Source: Podarcis filfolensis (taxonomy: Eukaryota). Taken from it: DNA of 64,000 bases. Both the position numbers and the translations under genes were made by a program. Positions 1,385 to 51,147 of the stretch are shown piece after piece (within the stretch, counting starts at the first letter, position 1; every line of letters begins with the position of its first letter). The DNA lies in assembly GCA_964270895.1 (NCBI GenBank), contig OZ185435.1; one strand, 5' to 3'. The notes under the pieces were generated by a model. It saw nothing but the letters and a program-made list of their open reading frames with translations, made no database searches and was not told the origin of the DNA.

Positions 1385-2686
1385 CTGAAAGACACAGATG
1401 GTTACAATTCCTTAGGGTAATCTGTCTGTAGCATGAAAATGGTAGTTTTTTCTCAACCCAGAAACGTTCTTGCTCCTCCTTAACAAGCAACTCTCAATCT
1501 TGATTGATTCTAGATCCTGCTGTCCGCAAGGGTAGGTATGCTTACTTAACATGCATTTGCAAATCCTTGACTTAAGTCATCCACCCCTTTTTCCTCCATG
1601 CACATGCCCCAGGTGAATGAAGAAGGAAGTGGTGATTACAATTTTGGTATACACCCACCCAGAATGCGGTTGGGCAGGTGTGGCTACACTCCCCATTGCC
1701 AGGACCCCCTTCATCTGTTTTCAAATGGAAAACTTGCATGGTAACACAAAGCCAATCTGCTAGCAGCTTTTATTTTGGGAATGAAATCAGTTTCTCAAGA
1801 AGCACTTTCCAGAGGCAAACACTACACAATGGATCTAGATCGTGTGTGGACTACATCAAAAAACCAAGTCCTCTGTCTCCACTGATTCTAGAAGAAGATG
1901 TTGTGTGTACGTAGCCTGAGTTTCAAGGTGCTGGAAGTCTTGTAAGATATGGTTGCTCACCAGATCCAAGGATCATAAGCAATGTAGTGTGGCTCTGCAG
2001 TGCCATTTGGAGTCTCTCAAGAAATGTTTCACATAATTGGAAGCCCCAGAGCCCAACAACAGTTCAGAGCAGGAAAGGAATGCAGGAAGCTGGTAGGGCA
2101 TCCCTCACAGATCCCCACCCAGCCTCTGCTTAAACACCCCAAGGAAAGAAGAATTGGCTGAGGGTACTTTAGATTTTGGTTATTATTAGGACTGTTACCT
2201 GATAAAAGAAAATTTAGTCAATTTATCCTACAAGTGTGAATTAGTCAATCCAAGGGCACCGACTTGCCCCCCCCCACTGCAGGTGGGCATCAAATGACGT
2301 GTCACATTACACATCACATGACGCATTCCGCCCCCACCTAGCGCACAAGCACTTGCACACTGGGCTAGGACACACGGGCATCCTGCCGCTGTGATGCCAG
2401 CACTCGTGCACTGGGTGGAAAATGGGGAGCATGGAGCTGGGCTCCATGCTCGGCCTCCTCCTCCTTGCGTGACATCAGTGGGGAGAAGGTGGTGGGGCAG
2501 GGCCACAGGATTTGGGGGGAGCACAGCCCCCTCCTTGAAAAATTTGGGGGGGCTGAAGACCCCTCATCACTTGGCACGCAGAAAGACTTTTGCCAGTTCT
2601 CACAATTATTTTCAAGGCATTGTTCCACTGTATTCATTGTTAAAGCCAGTCCTACAAATGAAAAACAACCAGAGATTAATTATGAT

Positions 2687-3568
2687 CAGTGGCGTAGCGT
2701 GGGGGGTGCCAGGGGTGCCGGCCGCACCGGGCGCAACATCTGGGGGGGGCGCGAGTCCAGAGGGAAGGGACAAGTTCCTTCCTCCGCCGGGCTCCCCGCC
2801 GCCGCCGCCAGCCTTGCGCCCTAGCGCGCCCCCCCCCCCGCCGCCGCCGCTGCGGCTGCGCTCCACTCACTGCTCGCAGGAGGAGCAGCCGCTGCAGCAG
2901 CGCCGACGCCGCCACCGACGCCTGGCCGGGCACCGGCAGCCTCCGCACCCCGATGCCGACGCCGGCGCCATCCCCTCGGCCCAGCCACAGGCGGCGGCTG
3001 CTTCTGCCGACTGGGAGGGAGGAGAGCTCCGAGGGGCCTCGACGCGCCCTGCCCTCCCCAAAACCCTCCGAGAGGAAGCCGGCGGGCGGGCGAGGGTCTC
3101 CCGTCGGAAGGGGGCGCCGCTGGCTCCGGCTCTCAGCGCAAGTCTCAGCCGCGGGGGAGGGGGGGCGAGGACGGAGCTCGGCTGGAAGCCCCCGGACCCG
3201 GCCGGGAGGAGGAGAGGCGCTCGCCAAGCCCGGATCTGGAGCGCCTCGGAGCGCGGGCTCCACCTACAGCCCAAGGAGACGAGGGGGCGGGGAGGCGCCC
3301 GAGGGGAGGGGGCTTCGGCTGCCTCGGCCCGCGGGGGCTCCGCAAATAATAAATTTAATAAATTCCTGCTGAGCCTTTGGGGGGGTCTTTGGCTCCTTCG
3401 CTCGCCCCCAGCCCCAGTGGCGTAGCGTGGGGGGTGCAGGGGGGGCCGGCCGCACCGGCCGCAACATCTGGGGGGGGCGCGCTCGCACTCGAGTGCTAAA
3501 ATCCACGGGTTAAGGGGCGCAAATTACTTGCCTTGCCCCGGGTGCTGACAACCCACGCTACGCCACTG
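2687..3568. mobile_element. Composite non-autonomous hAT-type DNA transposon (882 bp) with GC-rich interior
   Basis: TIRs CAGTGGCGTAGC / GCTACGCCACTG; perfect 8-bp TSD ATTATGAT at 2679-2686 and 3569-3576; a second copy of the ~68-bp left end begins at 3415. Confidence 0.92.
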
Positions 3569-4721
3569 ATTATGATTGAAAATGTGTGGCTGGCATGAAA
3601 GACTCTCCAAAAACCATGAGAAGCTTTACTGAGAGGCTTTACAGTTGCATGTTAATCAAACAGAGTGATTTCAGGCTTTGCGCCAAGCCACATCTCTACC
3701 ATCTTTCAATAATATGCCCACTTGCATTAGCAAAATTAGCCTTCCGTTCAGTTTTATCTCAGAAGAGAACTGTCATGAATAAGGCTTAGAATCAACCAAA
3801 TCTGAAATAAAGGCATACAGCAACATATTGCAACTCCACTTTAAAAGTCAAGTGAAGAGACCTCTATGTCAGTATCTCATACTTTGTAGCATGGTAGTTC
3901 ATTTATGTGTTTTGCTCAAGGATCATATATTTGATTTACTGCTTTGAGCTCATGCAACTAAAGTTTTTTAAAAAATGCCTACAGTCCAACTTTTTCATAG
4001 ATAATTATTATGGTCTCTTTCTATTATGAAAAATGCCCCCTATCCCCAATCTGAAGGGCATGATAGAGAAGGAATATTTATTCCACAAGGCAGGATAGGA
4101 TAGATCTGGTTTCCCAAATCACTCATGCTCTTTGGCCCAGTTCATACTGGCAAACAACTGGGGACTGACCATGTTGGAATTTAAACTGCAGGGGGAGCTG
4201 GTCCACGTGGGAATCATTTGCAAAGCACATGCCACTAAGTTTTGAAAGTTTACAGTAGTAAATCTGTGTGATGTGTGTTATAAGTCTAAACAGAAAACAG
4301 CACATACATATGGACAGCCACATGAAACAATTTAAACAAAGTTTGGATCAAGCCCTGGAGTCTAGTTGTTTGCACCAACTGGGACTTCCTGAACAACAGC
4401 TACTGTGCTCCAAAGGGCAACCTAAGCTGGTCCTTTATCTGGATTTTGGAGACGAAAAGGATCCCCACCACTGGCATATGAGAACTTTAGGGTTGCATAT
4501 GTAAGGTGAATTAAAGTGCTCTGTCACCTGTGTGCAACTAACCCGCTTTCTTTTTAAAACGCAGACGTTTTGCCATTTGGAAAGTGATGGGAAAATGTAT
4601 TGAAAAGTGTTGGATGAACAAATGACTAACGGGAACACATGTAAACACCTTGCAAGCAATTAGGGTGAATGTAGAATGTGTCCTCGTTGTCGGATAATTA
4701 ATCCACAAACTGCTCAGAATG

Positions 4722-49963: not shown

Positions 49964-51147
49964 TTTCTTTTTTTTTAAATAATATTTTATTAAAATTTCA
50001 AAAGAAGTTACAAAAGTGATAAAAAAAATAGAAAAAAGAAAACAAAAAATACAAAATACAGAATAAAAAAAGAAAAAAGAAGCAATTAAAAGTAAATCCA
50101 TCTTTCAATGTCCTGCCTTTCATTTACTTGTTTCCCTGACCTCCTCACACCTCCCTTTTTTGTATTCCATTTCAAATGGTTAATTCAGCAAATCCTTTCC
50201 CTCTTTGTTTTTATCTTAATTCTTTATCTTAACATATTATAGCTTCATATTTTCATCTATTAACAATCCTTTTTTCACATATTCCTTTTTAACATTGTTG
50301 CTAAAACCGCTTCATTTCATTCCGACATCATTTTAACATTCATTAATTTTACAATGTTTCTGTAGATAATCTTTAAATTTCTTCCAATCTTCTTCCACCG
50401 ACTCTTCTCCCTGGTCTCGGATTCTGCCAGTCATTTCTGCCAGTTCCATATAGTCTATCACTTTCATCTGCCATTCTTCCAGAGTGGGTAAATCTTGTGT
50501 CTTCCAGTACTTTGCAATGCGTATTCTTGCTGCTGTTGTAGCGTACATAAAGAAAGTTCTATCCTTCTTTAACACCAATTGGCCGACCATGCCCAGGAGA
50601 AAGGCCTCTGGTTTCTTCAAGAAGGTATATTTAAATACCTTTTTCATTTCATTATATATCATCTCCCAGAAGGCCTTAATCTTTGGGCACGTCCACCAAA
50701 GGTGAAAGAATGTACCTTCACTATCTTTACATTTCCAACATTTATTATTGGGCAAATGATAGATTTTTGCAAACTTGACTGGTGTCATGTACCACCTGTA
50801 TATCATTTTCATAATATTCTCTCTTAAGGCATTACATGCCGTGAATTTCATACCTGTGGTCCACAACTGTTCCCAGTCAGCAAACATAATGTTATGTCCA
50901 ACATCTTGTGCCCATTTAATCATAGCAGATTTAACCATTTCATCCTGAGTATTCCATTTCAACAGCAAGTTATACATTCTTGATAGTATCTTAGTTTTAG
51001 GGTCTAATAGTTCTGTTTCCAATTTTGATTTTTCCACCTGGAAGCCATTTTTTTGTCCAAATTGTAAGCCTCCCTTATTTGATAATAATGAAGCCAGTCT
51101 CGCAACTTATCTTTTAGTTTCTCAAAACTCTGCAATTTCAATTTGTC
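49964..51147 (-). mobile_element. 5'-truncated L1-clade LINE (ORF2 C-terminus, 3'UTR and A-rich tail) with 17-bp TSD
   Basis: ORF 50333-51037 contains the CCHC knuckle CWKC...HLWWTC. AATAAA lies at 49991-49986 before the A-tail. TSD TGGATCTCCACTTTTCT at 49947-49963 and 51148-51164. Confidence 0.93.

What the first reader, a model, noticed from the sequence alone, without database searches (positions are those of the whole stretch)
2687..3568. Composite hAT element: two left ends, one right end, one TSD (possible cargo-capturing 'Pack-hAT')
Seen: the unit is bounded by TIRs and a perfect 8-bp TSD (ATTATGAT). Its last 154 bp (3415-3568) are themselves a complete MITE with both TIRs. The inner MITE has no TSD of its own (left flank CCCAGCCC, right flank ATTATGAT), and the outer left end (2687-2754) is a slightly diverged copy of the inner one. 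Established: hAT transposases make 8-bp TSDs and can pair the outermost ends; gene-fragment capture is known for Pack-MULEs and some other DNA transposons. Inference: the ~660 bp between the two left ends was mobilised as cargo together with the MITE, giving a composite transposon analogous to bacterial IS-flanked ones. The perfect TSD and undecayed CpGs suggest a recent event.
Basis: partly seen in the sequence, partly recalled or inferred. Interest (0 to 1): 0.75.

Follow-up and report, generated by a model that had tools for sequence, protein, structure and literature searches.

The report
Young copy of three-ended hAT transposon
An 882-base cut-and-paste (hAT-type) transposon with two left ends and one right end jumped very recently into this wall-lizard site, but it is one copy of a family of about 50, not a fresh capture of host DNA made here.

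Summary
A perfect 17-nt terminal inverted repeat (TIR) occurs three times (2687+, 3415+, 3552-). A perfect 8-bp target-site duplication (TSD), ATTATGAT, flanks the whole 882 bp. The outer left end is 94% identical to the inner one. The interior is 661 bp at 74% GC with undecayed CpG.

Public reads add two things.
- **Empty site.** Long contigs of two other species carry the exact empty site with a single ATTATGAT. A contig from a second individual of the same species suggests it too. The unit therefore inserted in one step, recently.
- **Multi-copy interior.** In that second individual, contigs covering 2903-3434, including the interior/inner-left-end junction, sit at about 50 times single-copy depth with one difference in 532 bp. 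The interior is also abundant in two other species. In a fourth organism contigs bridge both internal junctions.

So this is a recently mobile multi-copy family of three-ended non-autonomous hAT elements, and the capture, if there was one, is old. No donor locus, gene, Pfam or Rfam match was found for the interior, and the transposon's own ends are just as GC- and CpG-rich. Host origin remains unproven.

The scan noted composites of the same kind and nearly the same size elsewhere in this genome (s1-322386, s1-312112). This is a new member of a known kind.

The parts
2679..2686 (.). Left copy of the 8-bp target-site duplication ATTATGAT (fits the hAT target pattern nTnnnnAn)
   Evidence: The empty-site joint 2678->3569 with 8 shared letters is.
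2687..2753 (+). Outer left end: the 17-nt TIR (2687-2703) plus 50 nt of subterminal sequence, equal to the first 67 nt of the MITE and cut off there
   Evidence: (D1: 94% identity to 3415-3481).
2754..3414 (.). 661-bp GC-rich interior ('cargo'): 74% GC, CpG o/e 0.83, multi-copy in four organisms, origin unknown
   Evidence: for composition. for depth: about 545-676 against 11 in X3, with many variant contigs in X4 and X5. Searches found no family or protein match.
3344..3364 (.). AT-rich box inside the interior. It holds two AATAAA on the + strand (3348-3353, 3357-3362) and looks TATA-like on the - strand
   Evidence: Read from the sequence. Function not tested.
3415..3568 (+). Complete inner 154-bp MITE. 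The left TIR is 3415-3431 and the right TIR is 3552-3568, and the right TIR is also the right end of the whole unit
   Evidence: I7: 17 nt, 100% complementary; about 100 contigs per run with unrelated flanks at 3414/3415 and 3568/3569. DNA fold z-score -4.3.
3569..3576 (.). Right copy of the target-site duplication ATTATGAT

Best explanation
This is a recent insertion, probably still polymorphic, of one member of a multi-copy family of about 880-bp, three-ended, non-autonomous hAT elements. The order is left end, 661-bp GC-rich interior, then a complete 154-bp MITE.

The element encodes nothing. A hAT transposase made elsewhere in the genome recognises the outer left end (TIR plus subterminal sequence) and the single right end, passes over the inner left end, cuts the 882 bp out and pastes it in with an 8-bp duplication.

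Shown:
- The anatomy.
- One-step arrival at an empty ATTATGAT site.
- Multi-copy status of the interior and of its junction with the inner left end.
- Near-identity of this copy to the family's main variant.

Inferred:
- The family arose once, before these lizard lineages separated. A solo MITE together with the DNA on its left was placed under the control of a second left end.
- This happened either by end bypass (the transposase used a left-end fragment lying further out) or by gap repair that copied an ectopic MITE, ran on into its flank, and was then joined to a partly copied left end.
- The new unit then amplified.
- Whether the 661 bp were host promoter or CpG-island DNA, or part of another repeat, is not settled.
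For: - Anatomy and chance control.
- The hAT target pattern nTnnnnAn, 8-bp TSD and 17-bp TIR are as described for Hermes (PMC10368747). ATTATGAT has T at position 2 and A at position 7.
- Empty site: the joint 2678->3569 skips 890 with 8 shared letters. It stands in a 2106-nt contig of X4 and a 1905-nt contig of X5, with 255 letters on the shorter side. In X3 (same organism label as the window's best holder) a 1028-nt contig carries 19+8 left-flank letters joined directly to 3577 onward.
- Multi-copy: X3 contigs 2903-3030, 3001-3134 and 3105-3434 have depths 650, 676 and 545 against 10-11 for the flanks, with 0, 0 and 1 differences. The last contig bridges 3414|3415.
- Other organisms: X15 contigs bridge 2685-2776 and 3167-3488. 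Interior depth in X4 and X5 is hundreds of times flank depth, with up to 49 variant contigs at one position.
- Solo MITEs: about 30-100 contigs per run have unrelated flanks exactly at 3414/3415 and 3568/3569.
- Unchecked notes from this scan describe composites of the same kind, 878 nt and 898 nt long, in other places of this genome.
Against: - Depth summed over Logan contigs is only a rough proxy for copy number. High depth could also come from a local tandem amplification rather than dispersed copies.
- I could not fetch a second full-length copy with its own TSD.
- The two flank/transposon junctions at this locus were not checked in reads.
- The X3 empty-site contig has only 19 (27 with the TSD) letters on its short side. 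That is below the tool's 31-letter rule for bridging.
- For organisms B and C, no listed contig bridges the internal junctions.
Confidence: 0.8

Rival explanations
1. One reading: a fresh Pack-hAT capture. The 661 bp would be host DNA (a CpG-island promoter or first exon) picked up recently, with this locus being the first or only product.
For: - Two left ends with one TSD.
- CpG o/e 0.83.
- On the minus strand the interior reads like a gene start: an AT box at 3364-3344, about 370 nt of GC-rich sequence, an ATG at 2971, and a GTGAGT at 2870-2865.
- Unchecked notes from this scan report hAT elements in this genome that carry the starts of GNAL and SPR.
Against: - The same interior and its junction with the inner left end are at about 50 times single-copy depth in another individual. 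They are also present in three other organisms, so any capture is old and did not happen here.
- No Pfam, Rfam or protein relative was found.
- In 74% GC DNA long open frames occur in all six frames, and one GTGAGT is expected by chance.
- The MITE ends are as GC- and CpG-rich as the interior.
Confidence: 0.05
2. An ordinary deletion derivative. The interior would be native transposon sequence from a longer, possibly autonomous, hAT element of the same family, so nothing was captured.
For: - The interior is multi-copy with many variants in organisms B, C and D.
- Its composition matches that of the MITE ends.
- No host gene homology was found.
Against: - A simple internal deletion does not produce a second, complete left end starting exactly at TIR base 1 inside the element.
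- The outer left end stops matching the MITE abruptly at base 67.
- No transposase-like frame was found in the interior.
- No longer element with this TIR lies in the window.
Confidence: 0.3
3. Two-step origin at this site: a solo MITE inserted here first, and the interior plus a duplicated left end was added later by local duplication or insertion. A variant of this rival is that the arrangement is an assembly artefact.
For: The inner MITE shares its right end with the whole unit, and that end abuts the TSD.
Against: - Other samples have the fully empty site and no solo MITE there.
- The interior/inner-left-end junction exists in many copies elsewhere.
- A misassembly would not create a perfect 8-bp duplication of a site that is single in other samples.
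Confidence: 0.03

Closest known systems
Multi-copy Pack-TIR elements of animals, e.g. Pack-hAT-N8_XT of Xenopus tropicalis (Tan et al. 2021, PMC8277862)
   Same: - A non-autonomous hAT element carries a few hundred bases of GC-rich, 5'-end-like DNA.
- It amplifies to several sites, each with its own 8-bp TSD.
- The paper notes that multi-copy Pack-TIRs tend to hold high-GC cargo, and it lists end bypass and template switching as origins.
   Different: - No parent gene is identified here, so the defining feature of a Pack element is unmet.
- The copy number (about 50 in this species, apparently more in relatives) is far above the 3-5 copies of the four multi-copy cases in that survey.
- This element keeps a complete inner MITE and so has three ends.
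Ac/Ds macrotransposons and alternative transposition in maize and rice (e.g. PMC9910405, PMC4270019; found, not read)
   Same: Ends belonging to two separate hAT copies are paired, so the DNA between them moves as part of one larger transposon.
   Different: - Those are single laboratory or field events between full elements kilobases apart.
- Here the outer 'element' is only a 67-nt left-end fragment.
- The product became an amplifying family.
Bacterial IS-flanked composite transposons
   Same: The outermost ends of two end-bearing modules define a larger mobile unit with cargo.
   Different: - Those have two complete, autonomous IS copies with four ends and their own transposase genes.
- Here there are three ends, no transposase, and mobilisation in trans.
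Other hAT composites noted by this scan in the same genome (s1-322386, 878 nt in CACNA1S intron 11; s1-312112, 898 nt)
   Same: The size and description are nearly the same: three TIRs and about 650 nt of CpG-rich interior. They are probably sister copies of this family.
   Different: I did not see their sequences, so identity with this family is unverified.

Membership tests
hAT superfamily (non-autonomous member) | 8-bp target-site duplication | tested here: met
   ATTATGAT lies at 2679-2686 and 3569-3576. The empty site has one copy in X4 and X5.
hAT superfamily (non-autonomous member) | Target preference nTnnnnAn | tested here: met
   ATTATGAT has T at position 2 and A at position 7. The pattern is as stated for Hermes in PMC10368747. 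A single site is weak evidence.
hAT superfamily (non-autonomous member) | Short TIRs of about 10-25 bp beginning YAG | tested here: met
   The 17-nt perfect TIR begins CAG.
hAT superfamily (non-autonomous member) | A cognate transposase with BED and hAT dimerisation domains present in the genome | not testable with these tools
   No other copy of the TIR and no transposase frame were found in the window. The rest of the genome is not searchable here.
MITE (inner 154-bp unit) | Short, non-coding, with TIRs, and high copy number with unrelated flanks | tested here: met
   It is 154 bp with 17-nt TIRs. About 30-100 contigs per run have unrelated flanks exactly at both ends, and depth is thousands of times the flank depth.
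Pack-TYPE / Pack-TIR element | Non-autonomous TIR element with a TSD and no transposase | tested here: met
Pack-TYPE / Pack-TIR element | The interior is homologous to a host gene or locus that exists elsewhere without the TIRs (a parent copy) | tested here: inconclusive
   No Pfam match, no Rfam match and no protein relative by word search in either strand. The DNA-level search of the host genome that would decide this is not available. In X3 no continuation other than the inner left end follows 3414 (contig 3105-3434).
Composite transposon / macrotransposon | Ends of two separate copies flank intervening DNA, and the TSD flanks the whole | tested here: met
   Two left ends are in direct orientation with one right end, and the TSD lies outside the outermost ends only. 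The site is empty in other samples.
Composite transposon / macrotransposon | The unit transposes repeatedly as a whole, giving several copies with different TSDs | tested here: inconclusive
   Internal junctions stand at about 50 times single-copy depth and occur in four organisms, but no second full copy with its own TSD could be fetched. Unchecked scan notes report two.

The most novel reading that the evidence does not exclude
The interior is a host promoter or first-exon CpG island that lay next to a promoter-proximal MITE and was taken up by end bypass. The resulting Pack-hAT has become an unusually successful multi-copy element that has moved recently in wall lizards. It would have about 50 near-identical copies in this species and hundreds in relatives. 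It would be seeding CpG-island-like, possibly promoter-competent DNA into introns, and it would still be segregating in populations. In the 100-genome survey, multi-copy Pack-TIRs were only 4 of 370 cases, with a handful of copies each (PMC8277862).
Probability: 0.25. Interest if true: 0.6.

Novelty: new member of a known kind. Interest (0 to 1): 0.38.

Why it matters
- The insertion is absent from two sister species and apparently from another individual. It belongs to a subfamily that is 99.8% uniform. Together these point to recent hAT transposase activity in a wall lizard. To my knowledge (not checked here), recently mobile cut-and-paste transposons are uncommon in amniotes.
- If the interior proves to be host promoter DNA, the family would be the most prolific multi-copy Pack-hAT reported in an animal. 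It would also offer a natural experiment in scattering CpG islands into introns.
- As it stands, the copy is an ordinary member of its family and a usable presence/absence marker. Its effect on the host gene is unknown.

Tried and rejected
- **Rfam, evalue mode, 2300-3900:** only two chance-level hits (E about 0.8). The interior is not rRNA, snRNA or another known RNA.
- **Pfam on four interior frames:** nothing.
- **Word-index protein search:** the + frame 2754-3425 and the - frame 2870-3274 both gave nothing.
- **Exact-product look-up of the 135-aa minus-strand frame:** not on record, so no other copies could be fetched that way.
- **Two metagenome-contig scans:** the AT box of the interior and the TIR plus left end each gave 0 hits.
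- **Findings look-up by sequence:** blank.
- **Host gene:** the OSBPL5 intron context was not verified. No OSBP signature (HHPP motif) turned up in six-frame translation, and six long open frames elsewhere in the window gave no Pfam family.
- **Large representative-protein search:** not run. The operators flagged its cost, the interior frames are probably non-coding (all six frames are open in 74% GC DNA), and the donor question is a DNA question.
- **Literature search for this lizard MITE family:** nothing relevant.
- **rDNA or satellite origin of the interior:** considered and rejected, because many variant contigs occur per position and there is no Rfam match.

Full report
**Observation**

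- The 17-nt sequence CAGTGGCGTAGCGTGGG occurs at 2687-2703 (+), 3415-3431 (+) and 3552-3568 (-), and nowhere else in the 64-kb window even with 3 mismatches allowed. Shuffles give 0.03 expected matches, and none of 100 reached 3.
- ATTATGAT stands at 2679-2686 and at 3569-3576.
- The last 154 bp form a complete small inverted-repeat element (I7: 17 nt, 100% complementary). Its left neighbour is CCCAGCCC, so it has no duplication of its own.
- The outer left end 2687-2753 equals 3415-3481 at 63 of 67 positions (D1). The likeness stops abruptly at base 67.
- The 661 bp between the two left ends are 74% GC with CpG observed/expected 0.83. The flanks are at 0.18-0.23.
- A self-BLAST finds no other copy of any part in the window.

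**Public reads: setup**

One search found runs of four coded organisms. Runs of organism A hold 0.77-0.93 of the stretch's words. Organisms B and C hold about 0.6-0.66, and organism D about 0.2. I laid contigs of four runs on 2200-4050 at 85% likeness:
- X3: organism A, from a different sample and study than the best holder.
- X4: organism B.
- X5: organism C.
- X15: organism D.

**Result 1: the empty site**

- A joint from 2678 to 3569 skips exactly 890 letters, with 8 letters fitting either side.
- It stands in a 2106-nt contig of X4 and a 1905-nt contig of X5, each with 255 letters on the shorter side. That is the 882-bp unit plus one ATTATGAT removed.
- X3 has a 1028-nt contig whose first 19 letters are 2660-2678, followed directly by ATTATGAT and the right flank.
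- This is 27 left-flank letters in all. It is too long for chance but below the tool's 31-letter rule, so I call it suggestive.
- No sample shows a solo MITE at this site.
- The unit therefore arrived in one step, after the split from organisms B and C. It is probably still polymorphic, or specific to one lineage, within organism A.
- A misassembly would not create a perfect duplication of a site that is single elsewhere.

**Result 2: the interior is not unique DNA**

- In X3 the flanks have depth 10-11.
- Contigs 2903-3030, 3001-3134 and 3105-3434 have depths 650, 676 and 545, with 0, 0 and 1 differences from the window.
- That amounts to about 50-60 copy equivalents that are 99.8% identical over 532 bp.
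- The last contig runs across 3414|3415 into the inner left end. No alternative continuation broke it, so in that genome the interior is always followed by the inner left end.
- One further X3 contig (3001-3134, depth 9, 6 differences) carries letters that are the majority in B and C (3104 G, 3053 G). It looks like a single older copy.
- In X4 and X5 the interior has summed depths hundreds of times the flank depth, with up to 49 different contigs at one variable position.
- In X15 a 2182-nt contig ends with 2685-2776 (outer left end into interior), and a 322-nt contig covers 3167-3488 (interior into inner left end).
- Summed contig depth is not a true copy number, so these figures are rough. 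A local tandem amplification cannot be formally excluded from these data alone.
- The arrangement is nonetheless a family feature shared by at least organisms A and D, and the interior is repeated in all four.

**Result 3: the 154-bp unit is a very abundant MITE**

- Each DNA run has about 30-100 contigs with unrelated sequence (agreement about 0.33) starting exactly before 3414/3415 and after 3568/3569.
- Depth there is thousands of times single copy.
- In organism A, solo elements outnumber the composite by two to three orders of magnitude.

**What it is**

- The 8-bp duplication, its fit to nTnnnnAn and a 17-nt TIR beginning CAG match hAT elements as described for Hermes (PMC10368747).
- That paper also shows that the Hermes transposase finds the left end through BED domains bound to subterminal repeats within the first tens of bases. 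A 67-nt left-end fragment is thus a plausible functional end, though this is an inference for the present family.
- The element has no coding capacity. All six frames are open, as expected at 74% GC, and none matches Pfam.
- It must therefore be moved in trans.

**Origin of the family (inferred)**

- The inner left end begins exactly at TIR base 1. This is what one expects if the interior is simply the DNA that lay to the left of a normally inserted solo MITE.
- Two routes would put that DNA inside a transposon:
  - End bypass or macrotransposition, in which a left-end fragment lying further out is paired with the right end. This is known for Ac/Ds (papers found) and is listed as a model in PMC8277862.
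  - Repair of an excision gap that copied an ectopic MITE, ran on into its flank, and was joined to a partly copied left end. This corresponds to the gap-filling and template-switching models of PMC8277862.
- Both routes predict a donor locus with the interior beside a solo MITE flanked by CCCAGCCC.
- I could not search the host genome, so this remains untested.

**Host DNA or not?**

- On the minus strand the interior can be read as a gene start: an AT-rich box (3364-3344), a GC-rich leader, an ATG at 2971, a 34-codon frame, and a GTGAGT at 2870-2865.
- Scan notes report other hAT elements in this genome that carry the starts of GNAL and SPR (unchecked leads).
- Against this reading:
  - Nothing matched in Rfam, Pfam or the protein word search on either strand.
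  - One GTGAGT and long open frames are expected by chance at this composition.
  - The MITE ends are themselves 68-79% GC with CpG o/e 0.85, so the island look does not mark host origin.
- I put an old host-derived capture and native or other-repeat sequence at roughly comparable odds.

**Comparison with what is known**

- Tan et al. (PMC8277862) found 370 Pack-TIRs in 100 animal genomes, most of them hAT.
- Only four were multi-copy, with a few copies each, and those tended to hold GC-rich DNA.
- The present family works like those cases and like Ac/Ds macrotransposons.
- The defining Pack feature, an identified parent locus, is not met. I therefore file it as a three-ended composite non-autonomous hAT element.
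- The scan has already noted composites of the same kind and nearly the same size elsewhere in this genome: s1-322386 (878 nt) and s1-312112 (898 nt). The same stretch was also noted as s1-329765.

**Limits**

- Only one read-laying run was allowed, and I did not lay the probable source runs. The flank junctions of this locus therefore rest on the assembly, the TSD and the exact empty site.
- The OSBPL5 context was not verified.

**Verdict**

The unit moved whole and recently, but it is a member of an established multi-copy family. The capture idea is unproven and in any case old.
- It is a new member of a known kind and of moderate interest.

Noticed in passing
window 3001-3434 (reads of X3, X4, X5): Organism A carries one homogeneous interior variant at about 50 times single-copy depth. 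It also carries a single-copy variant that is 4.5% diverged and has the letters common in organisms B and C. B and C carry many variants at much higher summed depth. This looks like a burst from one master copy in the window's lineage.
   Followed up: partly
window 3474-3499 (loose ends): Many related MITE copies replace the centre of the 154-bp unit with TTAGGG-type telomere-like units followed by GGCGCAAAT. This agrees with scan notes on telomere-repeat-bearing hAT MITEs in this genome.
   Followed up: no
window 3502-3563 versus 2696-2757 and 3378-3501: In all four runs the right end of the MITE has about 2.3 to 6.5 times the summed depth of the left end. Either the right end is shared by more subfamilies or many copies lack their left part.
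   Followed up: no
window 2255-2575: The GC-rich stretch just left of the insertion is itself moderately repeated, at up to about 25 times flank depth at 2510-2571. Contigs of organisms B and C skip 99-205 bases inside it. It is present in the empty-site contigs, so it is older than the insertion. Its identity is unknown.
   Followed up: no
window 2703-2721: The outer left end has two perfect adjacent copies of GGGGTGCC just inside the TIR, while the inner left end has only one intact copy. These could be subterminal transposase-binding repeats and might favour use of the outer end.
   Followed up: no
window 2865-2971 and 3344-3364, minus strand: The interior can be read as a TATA-like box, a leader, an ATG, a 34-codon frame and then a GTGAGT. 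No relative was found, and at 74% GC this may be chance.
   Followed up: partly
window 50336-51106 (-): This is the longest open frame outside the transposon: 257 codons of ordinary amino-acid composition, with no Pfam match.
   Followed up: partly
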